NCBI GenBank assembly: GCA_965285935.1
Contig: OZ260664.1
Span: 83,700,001 to 83,764,000 of the forward strand
Direction of reading: 5' to 3'
From: Ophelia neglecta
Taxonomy: Eukaryota
DNA: 64,000 bases
Shown: positions 1,015-13,659 of the stretch, piece by piece
Numbering within the stretch: position 1 is the first letter of the stretch
Layout: the number at the start of each line of letters is the position of its first letter
Notes under the pieces: generated by a model
What the model was told of the DNA's origin: nothing
The model's database searches: none
The model's input: the letters and a program-made list of their open reading frames with translations, nothing else
Translations under genes and position numbers: made by a program

Positions 1015-1089
1015 ATTGGTACTGAGCTGTGTGCTGAGTGTAGCCACTTTCTCCTGAGCAGCTTCTAACTCTCTCCTCAACTTCTTAAT
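1015..1089 (-). CDS. NAV2: Neuron navigator coiled-coil exon (IKKLRRELEAAQEKVATLSTQLSTN)
   Basis: Matches the first navigator coiled coil (I-KLRREL--SQEKV-TLT-QL--N). Acceptor ttgtttcag|ATT, donor AAT|gtaagt, 75 nt, phase 0/0. Confidence 0.93.
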
Positions 1090-1617
1090 CTGAAACAACA
1101 ACAGCAACTTTAACTCAACCAGCAACATTTTACAAAATGGTATATTCAAATCCAATTTATTAAGCTCACAGTGTTATCTTGTGTCTACTTTACCATTAAA
1201 CACTCCTGCTTTCACAGTTAACCATAAATCAGCAAAGATTGGTTATAGAAAAGCAAGTTTATTTATGTTAGTGCTGAAGCAAATTATTTTTGATTTATTC
1301 AGTGTTTGTGTTGCAAATAATATTACTTGGTTAAGACCTAACTGGTTTAGTTTTTCAGTTTTTCCCTGTTTTTTATTTGTTTTTTATTTGTTTTTCGGGT
1401 GGGGTTTATTAAGTAGGTCATGACTTTCACAGAAGATAACTGTTTAAGAGTAAGTTTTGTGTTTACATACAAACCAAAGAGCTGGTTGGATGTACATTAT
1501 AATTTACTGAGACATCTCTACTAGGCGACCATAAACACAATTAGAGAACCCACAAACCCCGGGCAAGCCACTCCGACTTAAAGCTCTCCAGCGGTGAGAG
1601 AGGAGCTACATAATTAC

Positions 1618-1737: not shown

Positions 1738-2020
1738 TCATGTGGTACCTCCAGCCATAAAACCTCATTCTCACTCAAGTGTTTTACTGCTGGCTGACAT
1801 GATTTTTCAAACCATTCTGAGATTTATAGTCAGCGTGTTATAGTTTACACTTACAAGTCTTACAAGCATTGCTGTGAGTTTTCTATGCTACCCATTATGC
1901 TGTTCTGACAACATATAAATCACCTTGTGAGATATGGGGGACAGTATATAGGGGAATTCTACAAAACTGTGTTCAACAAAAGGTTAATTTGAGGTTAATA
2001 TGAAGGCATTATATTACTAC

Positions 2021-4693
2021 CTGATCTTTGGACTTTTTACGGCCATGTTTGTCCCCACGCTTAGGTGAAAGTCCTAGGCTTTGAGGAGCTTGACTGCTAT
2101 GTCCAGGGCTCGGAGTGCTATGTCCTATGCTACGTTCATGTCTATGACTGCCCAGACTGCTATGTCCTGGGCTCTGAGGGCTCCGTCCTAAGCTATCTCC
2201 ATGCCTATGACTGCTATGTCCTTGGCTCTGAGTACTATGTCCCGGGCTATCTCCATGTCTACGACTGCTATGTCCTGGGCTCTGAGTACTATGTCCCGGG
2301 CTATCTCCATGTCTACGACTGCTATGTCCTGGGCTTTGAGGGCTCCGTCCTAAACTATCTCCAAGTCCATGGCTGCTATGTTCTGAGCTATAGCTGCTGT
2401 ATCCTGTGCTATGGTTGCTATGGGCCTGACTGGGAAGGCTCTGTCCATGGTCATGACTGCCCTGACTGGTGATCTGACTGGCGTGTCCCATGCTGCGAGA
2501 CATGGCTGGACAGATATCCTGATGGCTGGGGTGTCCATGTCCTGGGCTGTGACTCCTGTGTCTAGCCCTGACAGTCCCCTGTCCACGATCAGGTCTGCTT
2601 GGCCTCTGTCCCTGTCCTGTGTGGGAGCTGACAGTGCTGAGGCTGGTCACCTCAGGGGCTTCATTCTCCTGCAGGTGTCTGTGTAGGGGACATGGATGGA
2701 ACCTCCCCTCTCCCCAGGCAGGCCGTCCCACCTGGGGGGACTGCGGAGCGGAATACACCCTCCTTTTGGCCTTCCCTGATGCAGCAGAATCTGTCCTATA
2801 CATAGAGTTGTCTTGATGAGGGACAGAATTCATCCTTTTTATGGGCAGGCTTTGTGGTGTCTGATGCACCCTGGTGAAAGCCTTGCCCTGTGGGTTCTGA
2901 CCCACTCCGGTTGTTGGGTTGCCCTGTGGGTTCTGACCCACTCCGGTTGTTGGGTTGCCCTGTGGGTTCTGACCAACCATGCTTGCTGGGTTTCCGTGTG
3001 GGTTCTGACCCACTCCGGTTGTTGGGTTGCCCTGTGGGTTCTGACCCACCGTGTTTGCCGGGGTTCCCCAGGCTATGGGGTTGCCCTGTGGGTTCTGACC
3101 CACCGTGCTTGCTGGGTTTCCCTGGGGGGTGTGACCCACCATGGTTGCTGGGTTTCCCCAGGCTATGGGGTTGTCCTGAGGCAGTGAGTTTGCCCTGATG
3201 AGGGTCTTCCCTGGAGGTGTCTGGGGGGTCGTGACAGGCCTGGCTAGGTTGGGGTGGGACCTGTAAGTCGCCTGGGACAAGGGCCTGTACTTGTTAACAC
3301 AGAACCCAGGGGTCCCAATCTTCTTGCTGCTCTTCTGACTCAACCTAGGAAGGCTATGTTTGCCAAACTTGGGTGCCTTCTTCGGAGCACTTTCTGAGCT
3401 AGCCTTTATTTTGTGCAATTTGTCCAACGTACTACTTCTACCGGAGTCCAAATTGACAGCTAAACTTCGAGTCTCTTTCAGGGATTGTGTGCGCCTGATC
3501 ATCCTCTTGGCGTTAGGCTTCTTCCACAGTTTCTCTGCCCAGCTTTCTGGTATTTTTGGGACTTCAGGTAGGCTCTGTTTTGGGCGGACTCTTCCTATTG
3601 GGCCAGGCTGGGGGCTGACCCTGCCCATCAGGCCTGGATGTGGGCTGAACCTTCCCAAACGGCCTTGCTGTGGGCTGTCTCTGCCCACTGGGCCAAGCTG
3701 AGGGCTGTCCCTGCCCATTAGGCCAGGCTGGGGGCTGACCCTTCCCAAACGTCCTTGCTGTGGGCTGTCCCTGCCCATTGGGCCTGGTTGAGGGCTGGCC
3801 CTGCCCAAACGTCCTTGCTGTGGGCTGTCCCTGCCCAATGGGCCTGGTTGAGGGCTGGCCCTGCCCATTGGACCAGCTTGGGGGCTGCCCCTGCCCATTG
3901 GGCCAGGCTGGGGGCTGGCCCTTCCCCCTGGTCTAGTGGAGCCTGACTTTGGGCTCAGGCTGCCCGGATTTGTTAGGCAGATGTCCGGCAGCGTCGCAGG
4001 GGCCGGTGTGGTGGGGGTTCTGGCATGCACACCAGCATCCTCACCACCACCTACCTCATGTTGTTTACAAACAGAACCCTCATCAAAGCCTTTTGGTGTT
4101 GAAGTCATCTCTAATCGCTCCACATCACTCCCAGGAACATCAGAGCCCCTCCCGGGAACATCTGGCTTGGTAGCCACCTTTTCAACCCCAAATGTGCCTT
4201 CATCACTATCACATCCATCTTGTGAGGCTATTCCATTGCCCTGAATTAAAGTTATTTTCTGTGTTTCACCTGATGGCAGGCCTTTGCCTCTCTTAACAGC
4301 AGAGCTATAATACCCATCCGGGGAAACTGATGAACTGCCATTAGATAAATCTAGTGCATTTTCCCTACCTCTGATCCCACAATCTCTGTTACCATAAGCC
4401 GTGCCATTGGCCCACCTGAATGAAGGTAAATCCTCCCTCCTGCCGGTCAGCCTGGACAATTCCTCCTCTGAGGTGTCACAGGAGGAGGTCCCCCCTTCAT
4501 GTATGGTGTCCAGGTGGACCGGGGACACTATGATCTTGGGCAGGCCTATCCTAGGAGACAGGTACGGCCCTTTAACGGGATCCGGCTCTGCCCTGGAGCT
4601 AGGCATCAAGTCCTTTTTTCTCACTTTCTGTTTCTCCCGTTTATGCTTGCTAGGCATGCTGTCTAAAACTTCATCCAACTCCTCCTCATACAT
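2021..4693 (-). CDS. Giant low-complexity coding exon (891 codons), probable alternative first exon of the navigator gene; alternatively a nested single-exon gene ending at 2009
   Basis: 894-aa ORF inside the 1090-10910 intron, same strand as NAV. An in-frame TAA lies immediately before the ATG. CAG|gtagta three codons before the stop is a phase-0 donor compatible with the phase-0 acceptor at 1089. All internal repeats (30, 36, 54 bp) are multiples of 3. Confidence 0.75.
2090..2400 (-). repeat. Coding 54-bp tandem repeat (SPGHSSRRHGDSPGHSTQ-type, His/Ser-rich)
   Basis: Units such as gactgctatgtcctgggctctgagtactatgtcccgggctatctccatgtctac. Confidence 0.9.
2880..3180 (-). repeat. Coding 33-36-bp tandem repeat (TTGVGQNPQGNP-type)
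   Basis: Units such as gccctgtgggttctgacccactccggttgttgggtt. Confidence 0.9.
3590..3935 (-). repeat. Coding 30-bp tandem repeat (GRASPQPGPM-type decapeptide, about 11 copies)
   Basis: Units such as gggctggccctgcccattgggccaggctgg; visible in the translation. Confidence 0.9.
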
Positions 4694-4969
4694 TTATTCA
4701 GTGTTGATGGGTTATAGAGCCAGACAAATATCCTTTACAAATAAACATGGATGTAGAAGCCTCAAGGCTGAAGCATGATACAACCTGAACTCTTGTTGCA
4801 CAACAATATCAAAGAAACTCCCTATCACTGCAAAACTTCCAACGCCAACTTGAGTTTGTGAAAGATGCTCCCACAAAACATATTTACCAGACTATCTTAT
4901 CCGGGAGCAGTTATTTTCACATTTCTAATCTTTTAGCATCAGATTGAGAAGAGTTTCGGAGCTGAGACT

Positions 4970-5050
4970 TTGCGTCTGAGCGTAACGCGCTGTCCACAGG
5001 TGTTTATAGCTTTACGGCCGTAGAAATGATCCTAGGTGATATCACATTGG
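4970..5050 (-). promoter_or_regulatory. Putative core promoter for the 891-codon exon (CCAAT, TATA, Inr-like)
   Basis: On the minus strand: CCAAT at 5050-5046, CTATAAA at 5009-5003 and TCAGAC at about 4979-4974, roughly 30 nt after the TATA. Canonical spacing, about 285 nt upstream of the ATG. Confidence 0.55.
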
Positions 5051-10910: not shown

Positions 10911-10987
10911 CTCGGCCTGCTGTTTCTCTTCTGCTGTGCTGTACACTGAACTAGAACTGGATACAAGTGACAGGCTAGATCCATGTA
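10911..10987 (-). CDS. NAV2: Neuron navigator internal exon (LHGSSLSLVSSSSSVYSTAEEKQQAE)
   Basis: Not in the ORF track. Encodes the conserved navigator motif HGSSLSLVS-SS-YST-EEK. Acceptor ttttatttcag|TA, donor GAG|gtaaga, 77 nt, phase 1 to phase 0. Confidence 0.93.
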
Positions 10988-11596: not shown

Positions 11597-11840
11597 GGTC
11601 ATCATCCCTGGATCCTGAGAGTTTGGACAGCCCGGGTAGGAAGACGTTAGCGTAGGGAGGGTTACCCGCGTTGGAGTTGCTGCGTACCAGGCCCATGGCT
11701 CCGGCGGAGGTTAGGGGGTAGGCAAACCTCCCCGACCCCTGTGAGGGGGTGGGGGAGCTGGGCCCAGCCCCGCCGTCCGCACTGATCTGACTGAAGGAGT
11801 TGGTCCTGGGCAGTGTGTCCGCTCGCGATGAGGGGTACAC
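11597..11840 (-). CDS. NAV2: Neuron navigator internal exon (VYPSSRADTLPRTNSFSQ...SGSRDDD)
   Basis: Acceptor tatttacccag|GTG (phase 0), donor GAC C|gtgagt (phase 1), 244 nt. Joins in frame with both neighbours. Confidence 0.88.
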
Positions 11841-12156: not shown

Positions 12157-13633
12157 CTGTTCTGACTTGGTTGACTTGAAGCTATCTGAGCGGTGTATTC
12201 CGTTCTGTGGGTTACTAATACTGGCCAGTATGTTCCTGGAGGTGAGACTGAGAGCCCGTGCCTGCTGTATCTGAGCCTGTATGTTAGACAGGCTCTCCAT
12301 GGACTCGGTCTCAGACATAGCCATCCTCATGGGGCCCCCTTTGGTCCAGGGCGAGGCTCCACTGGGAGATATGGTACTGAGCGGCCTGGAGGGTAGGTAG
12401 TCAGAGCTCATGTACCCGGCGGCTATACTGACATTGACGTAGGGGGAGGTGGGGCTGTACTCCCCGTCAGAGCGCACCCCGGCCGCCCGCCGAGCTGCCT
12501 CCTGCTTGCTGTAGGTGGCGTGAGGGTTGCTGATGATGGTACTGCCGATCAGCTGTCCGTCCGGACCCTTGGTTAGGTTCCCTCTGCTGCCAAACAGCCT
12601 CTCCTTCATGTCAGAGCTGTTACGTTTACGGTCCAGTGTGTTAGACTGGTACCCGTTCTGGAGAGGGACTCCAGCTTGAGTCTTGGAGCCTACAAGCCCT
12701 TTATTCCTCTCCAGGGTGCTGGCTCCATAGCTCTGAGGTCCCATGTCACTGCGGGTGTCCCGGGGGTAGGTCTGACTCCCGCTGGACGTCTTGGTCGGGG
12801 TCACCTTGTTATAGTTGCTCAGCCTCTCGCCTCTCATGGCCTCTGCCTCGGACAGCTTGCCGCTGGAGCCCTTGTGGCTGTTGGCGGAGGAAGGCCTCCT
12901 AAAGCCGTACCCTGTGGGCACGCCCGACCCCTTCTGTCCCTTACGCATCATGAGCACACTGTGGTCCGTGTTGGTCTCAGAATCCCGTTTTTTCTTGCCC
13001 TCAGGTTTTTCCTCGATGTCAGGAGAGTCCTGTAAGTCGGGGTCCTCTACTGCGATGGCGGTCCCCCCGTTGTTCCTGAGGGATCGCGAGCGCAGGTCGG
13101 TGATGGTGGCCTGGTTTGACTTCTTCTTGATGAAGGCGGCCCCTGAGAGTCCTGACTGGTGGTATCCCAGCCCCTTCAGGTCGTTCCTCTCCTTGGCGCT
13201 GACCGGGAGAGAGGCTCTCTCTAGTCCGCCTCTCTCAAACGAGCCTCCGCTCGAGTTACTGATGTCCTCTCCTATACAGTACTTCCTCCAGTTCTCTCCG
13301 AGGATGTTCTCCAGGCTCTCCTTGCCGGCGCTGGCAGGTCTCTCCCCCCCGCCACTCACCCGTTCAGGGTTTAGGTTTCTGCCGAGGATGGCGTTGGAGG
13401 TCTTTGGAGCATGGAGGAGGTTGGAGGTCCGGGTGGGGAGGCTCCGTGTGGTCAGGCTCGTGCCCGCGGTGCCGTTAGGGGCCCGCTTTAGGCTCCCGTA
13501 GGGGTTAGCGCGGTCCGAGCCATTCCCGCTCAGAGAAGACCCGAGCGACGACCCCGTCAGGCGCTCGTCTGTGCTGATGTCATTGATGGTGTCACTGATC
13601 TCCCCCGAACTGATCGAGCTCGAATCGTCAAAA
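12157..13633 (-). CDS. NAV2: Neuron navigator family (NAV/unc-53/sickie) large internal exon, Ser/Gly-rich region
   Basis: Translates FDDSSSISSGEISDTINDISTDE...IISNPHAT...SETESMESLSNIQAQIQQARA...KSTKSEQ. The DDSSS-SSG-SDT block is typical of navigators. Acceptor ttttggatctttcag|T (phase 2), donor CAG|gtctgt (phase 0), 1477 nt. The gene symbol is only family-level; invertebrates generally have a single NAV. Confidence 0.9.
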
Positions 13634-13659
13634 CTGAAAGATCCAAAAACAGACACTAA

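What the first reader, a model, noticed from the sequence alone, without database searches (positions are those of the whole stretch)
2021..4693. 891-codon disordered exon hidden in a navigator intron, poised to splice onto the coiled-coil/AAA half
Seen: a 2.7-kb ORF with a stop directly before its ATG, so it is not a simple internal exon. It has its own promoter-like elements and a phase-0 CAG|GTAGTA donor 9 nt before the stop, matching the IKKLRRELE exon. I recognise no globular domain and no TE protein. Inference: a short-type navigator isoform with a new ~900-aa disordered head. Read-through to the TAA at 2009-2011 would instead give a free-standing nested protein, and both products may exist.
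Basis: partly seen in the sequence, partly recalled or inferred. Interest (0 to 1): 0.82.

Follow-up and report, generated by a model that had tools for sequence, protein, structure and literature searches.

The report
Orphan disordered ORF inside navigator intron
A single-copy 894-codon reading frame with no known relatives lies inside an intron of an invertebrate neuron-navigator gene and shows signs of being protein-coding, but whether it is spliced onto the navigator's coiled-coil/ATPase half could not be tested.

Summary
An ATG-to-TAA frame of 894 codons lies on the minus strand at 2009-4693, with a TAA directly before the ATG and CAG|GTAGTA 9 nt before the stop.

**Not chance:** 500 dinucleotide shuffles give at most 277 open codons, and the other five frames hold 28-66 stops.

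**Location:** it sits in the 9.8-kb phase-0 intron between two conserved navigator exons, ...SLSLVSS...AEEKQQAE (10911-10987) and IKKLRRELE... (1015-1089). The P-loop half lies 40-62 kb further on.

**What it is not:** it is single-copy, has no Pfam family and is not in a transposon. An exhaustive search of 1.84 billion proteins matched only its three in-frame tandem arrays. The fold prediction is disordered (mean pLDDT 35). Two distant relatives have the same intron at about 1.5 and 3 kb with no such frame.

**For coding:** differences between repeat units cluster at third codon positions (pN/pS 0.25-0.66; permutation p = 0.014).

**For youth or weak constraint:** CpG o/e is 0.24, like the noncoding DNA around it, against 0.63 in navigator exons. 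GC3 is 0.53 against 0.70.

**Fusion model:** it is phase-compatible but unproven. The donor is ordinary: 13 GT sites in the frame score higher, 7 of them in phase 0. The promoter cues are weak.

The parts
2009..4693 (-). 894-codon ORF including its TAA stop. ATG at 4693-4691; stop at 2011-2009.
4694..4696 (-). In-frame TAA directly before the ATG. The open frame therefore begins exactly at the start codon.
2012..2023 (-). Candidate phase-0 donor CAG|GTAGTAATA. Exon end would be 2021, GT at 2020-2019, 9 nt before the stop.
3596..3925 (-). In-frame tandem array A: 11 units of 10 aa (GRxSPQPGPM), with a 90-nt higher order. Residues 257-366.
2888..3157 (-). In-frame tandem array B: 12-aa units (GNPxxxVGQNPQ). 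Residues 513-602.
2084..2362 (-). In-frame tandem array C: 18-aa His/Ser-rich units (GDSPGHSTQSPGHSSRRH), one with a 9-nt in-frame insertion. Residues 778-870.
10911..10987 (-). Canonical navigator exon (L)HGSSLSLVSSSSSVYSTAEEKQQAE. Phase-1 acceptor; phase-0 donor GAG|GTAAGA. It forms the upstream border of the host intron.
1015..1089 (-). Canonical navigator coiled-coil exon IKKLRRELEAAQEKVATLSTQLSTN, phase 0 at both ends. It forms the downstream border of the host intron and is the proposed splice target.
12157..13656 (-). Large Ser-rich navigator exon. The upstream border is approximate. Its homologues include proteins named neuron navigator 2/3 in molluscs.
11597..11840 (-). Navigator exon ...ADTLPRTNSFSQIS...SGSRDDD with a phase-1 donor ACC|GTGAGT. 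The acceptor position is approximate.
4977..5008 (-). TATAAA (5008-5003) about 31 nt before an initiator-like tCAgac (A at 4977). This is a weak, unverified promoter cue. ATGs at 4939, 4922, 4881, 4776 and 4748 follow it.
1156..1410 (-). Six AATAAA hexamers 599-848 nt past the stop. These are possible poly(A) signals if the ORF is a free-standing nested gene.

Best explanation
The 894-codon frame is a lineage-restricted, ATG-initiated, intrinsically disordered coding sequence. About a third of it was built by in-frame tandem-repeat expansion, inside the 9.8-kb phase-0 intron that separates the navigator exons ...AEEKQQAE and IKKLRRELE.... The most likely way it is used is as an alternative first coding exon. 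A transcript would start in the intron upstream of 4693 and splice from the phase-0 donor at 2021|2020 (or from one of the stronger phase-0 donors inside the frame) to the acceptor at 1089. The product would be a navigator isoform without the CH domain: coiled coils plus AAA+ domain with a new disordered head of about 890 aa.

Shown: the frame, its non-chance length, its position in the intron, phase compatibility, single-copy status, lack of relatives, predicted disorder, and a codon-position signature in the repeats.

Inferred: transcription, the start site and the splice junction.
For: - Non-chance open frame.
- The open frame starts exactly at an ATG that follows a stop. This fits translation initiation there rather than an internal exon.
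- Differences between repeat units cluster at third codon positions: 25 of 50 minimal changes, permutation p = 0.014. pN/pS in the ORF frame is 0.34, 0.66 and 0.25, against 0.54-2.96 in shifted frames.
- All repeat periods and indels are multiples of 3.
- Host-intron borders are both phase 0, and the candidate donor is phase 0.
- The donor's score (5.0) lies within the range of likely real donors of this gene, 3.7-11.
- An in-frame stop follows the donor after 3 codons, as expected once intron sequence begins.
- Navigator isoforms in other animals mainly differ in disordered and low-complexity regions, while all keep the AAA+ domain (PMC9877351).
Against: - There is no expression evidence of any kind.
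- The donor is not special: 13 GT sites in the ORF score higher, 7 of them in phase 0. The ORF is enriched, not depleted, in donor-like sites compared with the 1.5-kb Ser-rich exon.
- There is no CpG island, and five upstream ATGs lie between the TATA-like element and the start.
- The first ATG has T at position -3.
- CpG o/e is 0.24, equal to the noncoding background (0.27), against 0.63 in navigator exons. GC3 is 0.53 against 0.70. Constraint is therefore weak, or the sequence is young.
- Codon-usage correlation with navigator exons does not single out the ORF frame.
- No SxIP or other navigator-type motif is present.
Confidence: 0.4

Rival explanations
1. It is a free-standing nested gene. 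The same ATG-initiated frame is translated to the TAA at 2009-2011 (C-terminus ...KSKDQVVI) from an unspliced mRNA. That mRNA would be polyadenylated 600-850 nt downstream, inside the navigator intron on the same strand, and would be independent of the navigator protein.
For: - The ORF is complete from ATG to stop.
- Six AATAAA hexamers lie 599-848 nt after the stop, before the next navigator exon.
- The candidate donor is only of average quality.
- Composition differs from the host's exons: GC3 0.53 against 0.70, CpG o/e 0.24 against 0.63.
- The coding signature in the repeats fits this reading as well as the fusion reading.
Against: - A phase-0 CAG|GTA only 3 codons before the stop, matching the phase of the next exon, would be a coincidence.
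- No poly(A) hexamer lies within the first 598 nt after the stop.
- No relatives of such a gene were found anywhere.
- There is no transcription evidence.
Confidence: 0.3
2. It is an untranslated or no-longer-translated open frame: a T-poor, GC-rich minisatellite-bearing stretch of intron whose frame happens to be open or was only recently coding. It would have no present function.
For: - CpG o/e is at the noncoding background level.
- No homologue exists for any non-repeat part among 1.84 billion representatives.
- It is absent from the orthologous intron of two relatives.
- Codon usage is uninformative.
- The fold prediction is fully disordered.
- The strand has only 16% T, which lowers stop frequency.
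Against: - Shuffles that keep the composition never exceed 277 open codons, against 894 observed.
- The same DNA has 28-66 stops in each of the other five frames.
- About 580 non-repeat codons are open.
- There is a third-position excess and pN/pS below 1 only in the ORF frame.
Confidence: 0.2
3. It is an internal cassette exon of the full-length navigator. An acceptor inside the frame joins part of it in phase between ...AEEKQQAE and IKKLRRELE, inserting extra disordered sequence.
For: - Both intron borders and the donor at 2021 are phase 0, so any phase-0 internal acceptor would keep the frame.
- Navigator isoforms elsewhere differ by disordered inserts.
Against: - A crude scan found only two decent acceptors inside the ORF (4467 and 2678), in phases 1 and 2. 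The better acceptors (5167, 5079, 5059) lie upstream of the TAA-ATG and would bring in a stop.
- This reading does not explain why the frame is open right up to an ATG next to a stop.
Confidence: 0.07
4. It is a transposon ORF or a retrocopy of another gene that landed in the intron.
For: It is an intronless long ORF inside an intron.
Against: - It is single-copy in the 762-Mb genome. All other matches are to low-complexity repeats, and no parent gene was found.
- The flanks are unique except for a 170-bp satellite-like element 2 kb upstream.
- It has no Pfam family.
Confidence: 0.03

Closest known systems
Alternative isoforms of neuron navigators (human NAV1/2/3, Drosophila Sickie, C. elegans UNC-53) that differ in disordered or low-complexity regions
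   Same: The host gene is a navigator. The review PMC9877351 states that every known isoform keeps the C-terminal AAA+ domain and that isoforms mainly alter disordered and low-complexity regions, for example extra N-terminal disordered sequence in Sickie isoform J. The proposed product would be the same kind of thing: conserved coiled coils plus AAA+ with a different disordered N-terminus.
   Different: The head here is about 890 aa and has no detectable relative in any database searched. A third of it is young tandem repeats. It would replace the whole N-terminal half (CH domain and Ser-rich region) rather than add to it. Its use is unproven.
Nested genes within introns of a host gene, same strand
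   Same: It is a complete ATG-to-stop frame inside an intron, with poly(A) hexamers before the next host exon.
   Different: The frame ends 9 nt after a donor-like site whose phase matches the next host exon. No independent transcript has been shown.
Lineage-restricted (orphan or de novo) genes and repeat-expansion-built disordered proteins
   Same: It has no homologues, a predicted disordered product and in-frame minisatellite arrays. Its CpG content matches the noncoding background. It is absent from the orthologous intron of two relatives.
   Different: 894 codons is far longer than typical de novo ORFs. The relatives available are distant (43-50% identity in a conserved exon), so rapid divergence from an older gene cannot be excluded.

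Membership tests
Neuron navigator gene (host locus) | Conserved Ser-rich central exon homologous to annotated navigators | tested here: met
   55 hits down to E = 1.5e-103. They include proteins named neuron navigator 3 (Biomphalaria glabrata) and neuron navigator 2 (Elysia marginata).
Neuron navigator gene (host locus) | Coiled-coil exons and a C-terminal AAA+ P-loop domain downstream on the same strand | tested here: met
   Searches show the exons IKKLRRELE..., AAFEQSLSNMTTRLQQLTSTAEAK, DTELNELRATIEALRQQ, then ...RRIILCGPSGTGKSYLAQ and ...NVIILDNLHH, 40-62 kb downstream. In one search the Walker-A exon gives only sub-threshold P-loop hits in Pfam (E about 1e-3), as expected for a single exon. 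The IKKLRRELE exon is conserved in relatives.
Alternative first coding exon of a short navigator isoform | Donor in the same phase as the next constitutive exon | tested here: met
   CAG|GT at 2021|2020 is phase 0, and the exon starting at 1089 is phase 0; the canonical upstream exon also ends in phase 0.
Alternative first coding exon of a short navigator isoform | Donor of distinctive strength | tested here: inconclusive
   its score of 5.0 lies within the range of the gene's likely real donors (3.7-11). However, 13 other GT sites in the ORF score higher. The matrix is a generic one written from memory.
Alternative first coding exon of a short navigator isoform | Own transcription start, and reads joining 2021 to 1089 | not testable with these tools
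The sequence cues are weak.
Protein-coding sequence under selection | Codon-position-specific substitution pattern in the claimed frame | tested here: met
   pN/pS is 0.34, 0.66 and 0.25 in the ORF frame, the lowest of the three frames in each array; 8, 17 and 25 minimal changes at codon positions 1, 2 and 3; permutation p = 0.014. The comparison is between repeat units within one genome only, not between species.
Protein-coding sequence under selection | Conservation of the frame in related species | not testable with these tools
   No close relative is in the collections (best 50% identity in a conserved exon). The exact ORF is not on record. Distant relatives lack it.
Transposon ORF or retrocopy | Multiple copies or a parent gene in the genome; a transposon protein domain | tested here: not met
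   single-copy, with other hits only to low-complexity repeats; unique flanks; no Pfam family.
De novo or orphan gene | No homologue of the non-repeat parts in any other taxon | tested here: met
   an exhaustive phmmer search of 1.84 billion representatives gave 38 hits, all within residues about 211-393 or 508-627 (arrays A and B and their edges). The two best hits are unrelated repeat proteins; the word search found none. Caveat: near relatives are not in these collections or are withheld.
De novo or orphan gene | Orthologous noncoding sequence in outgroups | tested here: inconclusive
   in L018 and L019 the same intron is about 1.5-3 kb with stops in all frames. It is too diverged to align with the ORF.

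The most novel reading that the evidence does not exclude
A roughly 0.9-kaa coding exon arose in this lineage inside a navigator intron, largely by in-frame minisatellite expansion in CpG-depleted intronic DNA. It was then captured by the phase-0 splice acceptor of the first coiled-coil exon. This would give the conserved coiled-coil/AAA+ motor half of navigator a brand-new disordered N-terminal head, and perhaps also a free-standing product.
Probability: 0.25. Interest if true: 0.6.

Novelty: new variant of a known kind. Interest (0 to 1): 0.4.

Why it matters
If it is expressed and spliced as proposed, this would be a clear case of a large orphan disordered region being recruited as an alternative N-terminus of an old, conserved cytoskeletal regulator. 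That would be useful for studying how new exons are born in introns and how navigator's coiled-coil/AAA+ half works without its CH domain. If it is not expressed, it is simply an unusually long open frame in a repeat-rich stretch of intron. The sequence evidence puts it between these two readings: a coding signature is present, but the composition looks like the noncoding background.

Tried and rejected
- **RNA evidence.** I did not try again, so read laying was never used.
- **Pfam on the ORF.** Nothing found.
- **Word-index protein search.** Nothing found, probably because it was swamped by low-complexity words.
- **Exhaustive representative search.** It matched repeats only. The two best hits are unrelated repeat proteins, one SET-domain-like and one esterase-like.
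- **Exact-sequence look-up of the ORF.** Not on record.
- **Codon-usage (RSCU) correlation with navigator exons.** It does not separate the three frames (r = 0.33-0.45). It is uninformative, and one reference piece was probably taken in the wrong frame.
- **Motif scan.** No SxIP (EB-binding) motifs and only one RKKS site.
- **Transposon or retrocopy reading.** Rejected.
- **Cassette-exon reading.** Disfavoured.
- **Joined model.** The ORF spliced to the IKKLRRELE exon was not built or searched.
- **Literature.** A search on unc-53 short isoforms found nothing usable. The navigator review was used instead.

Full report
**Observation**

The minus strand of the window carries an ATG-to-TAA frame at 4693-2009, 894 aa.
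- The triplet just before the ATG is TAA.
- The frame ends ...AAA GAT CAG | GTA GTA ATA TAA, so a CAG|GT boundary in phase 0 lies 9 nt before the stop.
- About 930 nt further on, after ttgtttcag, a 75-nt phase-0 exon (1089-1015) encodes IKKLRRELEAAQEKVATLSTQLSTN and is followed by gtaagt.

The frame is not a chance product.
- 500 dinucleotide-preserving shuffles gave a mean longest open stretch of 140 codons and a maximum of 277.
- The other five frames of the same DNA hold 28-66 stops.
- This strand has only 16% T, which helps keep frames open, but the shuffles keep that composition.
- Three tandem arrays make up about a third of the frame. Their units are 30/90, 36/90 and 54 nt, and all units and indels are multiples of three.
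- About 580 non-repeat codons are open as well.

**Where it lies**

- The 506-aa open stretch at 13656-12139 is a navigator exon. It has 55 homologues (best E = 1.5e-103, 50% identity), including proteins that their sources name neuron navigator 3 (Biomphalaria) and neuron navigator 2 (Elysia).
- Downstream come an exon ending ...SGSRDDD with a phase-1 donor (about 11840-11597) and the exon (L)HGSSLSLVSSSSSVYSTAEEKQQAE (10987-10911), whose donor GAG|GTAAGA is in phase 0.
- I fetched 80 kb below the window start. It holds the rest of the gene on the same strand: AAFEQSLSNMTTRLQQLTSTAEAK, DTELNELRATIEALRQQ, further coiled-coil exons, the Walker-A exon ...RRIILCGPSGTGKSYLAQ and ...NVIILDNLHH.
- The Walker-A exon gives only sub-threshold P-loop hits in Pfam.
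- tblastx against loci of relatives shows that the SLSLVSS exon and the I(K/R)KL(R/K)REL exon are neighbours there, about 1.5 kb apart in L019 and about 3 kb in L018. In between there are stops in all frames and no conserved exon.

The canonical junction is therefore 10911 to 1089, phase 0 to phase 0. The ORF sits inside that intron, which is 9.8 kb long here.

**What it is not**

- It is single-copy in the 762-Mb genome. All other matches to it are low-complexity repeats, and no parent gene exists.
- Its flanks are unique apart from a 170-bp satellite-like element about 2 kb upstream.
- Pfam finds nothing.
- The word-index search finds nothing.
- The exhaustive search of 1.84 billion representatives finds 38 proteins. 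All match only arrays A and B. The two best are plainly unrelated repeat proteins.
- A single-sequence AlphaFold model has mean pLDDT 35, with only two short helices at residues 4-10 and 383-408.
- No sense-strand ORF of 150 aa or more follows the Ser-rich exon in four relatives within the DNA available. In L018 and L019 the whole orthologous intron is covered.
- These relatives are distant (43-50% identity in a conserved exon). Nearer ones are not in the collections or are withheld. Absence of homologues therefore shows lineage restriction at an unknown depth, not species-specificity.

**Is it coding?**

For:
- I compared the repeat units with each other. In each of the three arrays pN/pS is lowest in the ORF frame: 0.34, 0.66 and 0.25, against 0.54-2.96 in the shifted frames.
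- Counted per column, minimal changes fall 8, 17 and 25 on codon positions 1, 2 and 3, with permutation p = 0.014.
- The open frame begins exactly at an ATG that abuts a stop. This fits initiation there.

Against, or pointing to weak constraint or youth:
- CpG o/e of the ORF is 0.24, the same as the surrounding noncoding DNA (0.27 over 144 kb). Twelve navigator exon pieces together have 0.63.
- GC3 is 0.53 against 0.70 in navigator exons.
- Relative codon usage does not single out the ORF frame.

My reading is that this is a real but fast-evolving or young coding sequence (about 0.8). A silent open frame is the alternative.

**How is it used?**

*Fusion model.* The donor CAG|GTAGTA is phase-compatible. 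It has six to seven potential base pairs with U1, judged from the consensus, which I recalled from memory. Its score with a generic donor matrix (also from memory) is 5.0. That lies inside the 3.7-11 range of the best-scoring donor candidates at this gene's exon ends. But 13 other GT sites in the ORF score higher, seven of them in phase 0, for example GAG|GTAGGT at 4054 and CAG|GTGGGA at 2731. The ORF also has more donor-like sites per kb than the 1.5-kb Ser-rich exon. The donor is therefore plausible, not diagnostic.

*Promoter cues.* A TATAAA at 5008-5003 lies about 31 nt before an initiator-like CA. It is accompanied by no CpG island. Five ATGs follow it before the start codon, and the first ATG has T at position -3.

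*Nested-gene model.* Six AATAAA hexamers lie 599-848 nt after the stop.

*Cassette-exon model.* A crude acceptor scan finds only two decent sites in the ORF, in phases 1 and 2. The better ones lie upstream of the TAA-ATG. A cassette exon of full-length navigator is therefore unlikely.

I did not pursue it further, and read laying was not used. I built and searched no joined (spliced) protein model; exons were treated singly by reference.

**Comparison with what is known**

A review of the family (PMC9877351) states that all known navigator isoforms keep the AAA+ domain. It also states that isoforms differ mainly in disordered and low-complexity regions. A short isoform with a different disordered head would be a new variant of that known pattern. 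The unusual parts are the size of the head, its complete lack of relatives and its repeat-built structure.

**Verdict**

| Reading | Odds |
|---|---|
| Alternative first coding exon fused to the coiled-coil/AAA+ half | 0.40 |
| Free-standing nested gene | 0.30 |
| Untranslated open frame | 0.20 |
| Cassette exon | 0.07 |
| Transposon or retrocopy | 0.03 |

Interest is moderate (0.4). The case is attractive for exon or gene birth if expression is shown, but nothing here shows expression.

Noticed in passing
about 40.3-40.9 kb and 42.7-43.1 kb below the window start (G000:C7 about 83,659,100-83,659,700 and 83,656,900-83,657,350), minus strand: The navigator exon end ...SLSNMTTRLQQLTSTAEAK, with the start of its intron, appears three times in tandem. 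The segment EATFSPGSMRRQSS(S/T)ASTLSREPCTPGR after DTELNELRATIEALRQQSGM also appears three times. These are either tandem duplications that create alternative donors or exons, or intronic repeats carrying exon copies.
   Followed up: no
window:6688-6858: A satellite-like element of about 170 bp has 70-76% identical copies, partly in tandem, on several chromosomes, for example C7 near 108.998 Mb and C2 near 5.002 Mb. It overlaps a Pro-rich open stretch at 6880-6575.
   Followed up: partly
window 1-64000 and the 80 kb below it: The whole 144-kb locus is strongly CpG-depleted (o/e 0.27), while conserved navigator exons keep 0.63. This suggests heavy germline methylation of the gene body, and it gives a simple contrast between constrained and unconstrained sequence in this genome.
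   Followed up: partly
L017:106-1059 (+), upstream of the Ser-rich exon in a relative: A relative's navigator locus carries its own 317-aa ATG-initiated repeat-rich open frame (PQGYTRQSSVEPQGY...) about 2 kb upstream of the Ser-rich exon. Repeat-built disordered frames may therefore be a recurring feature of navigator loci in this group.
   Followed up: no
   Followed up: no
G000:C9:2842577-2845835, C1:21403001-21407886, C5:31123530-31125242: Other long open frames (up to 1298 aa) with P/G/Q-rich 10-12-aa repeats matched the ORF's arrays at low identity. These are probably unrelated repeat proteins or minisatellites.
   Followed up: no
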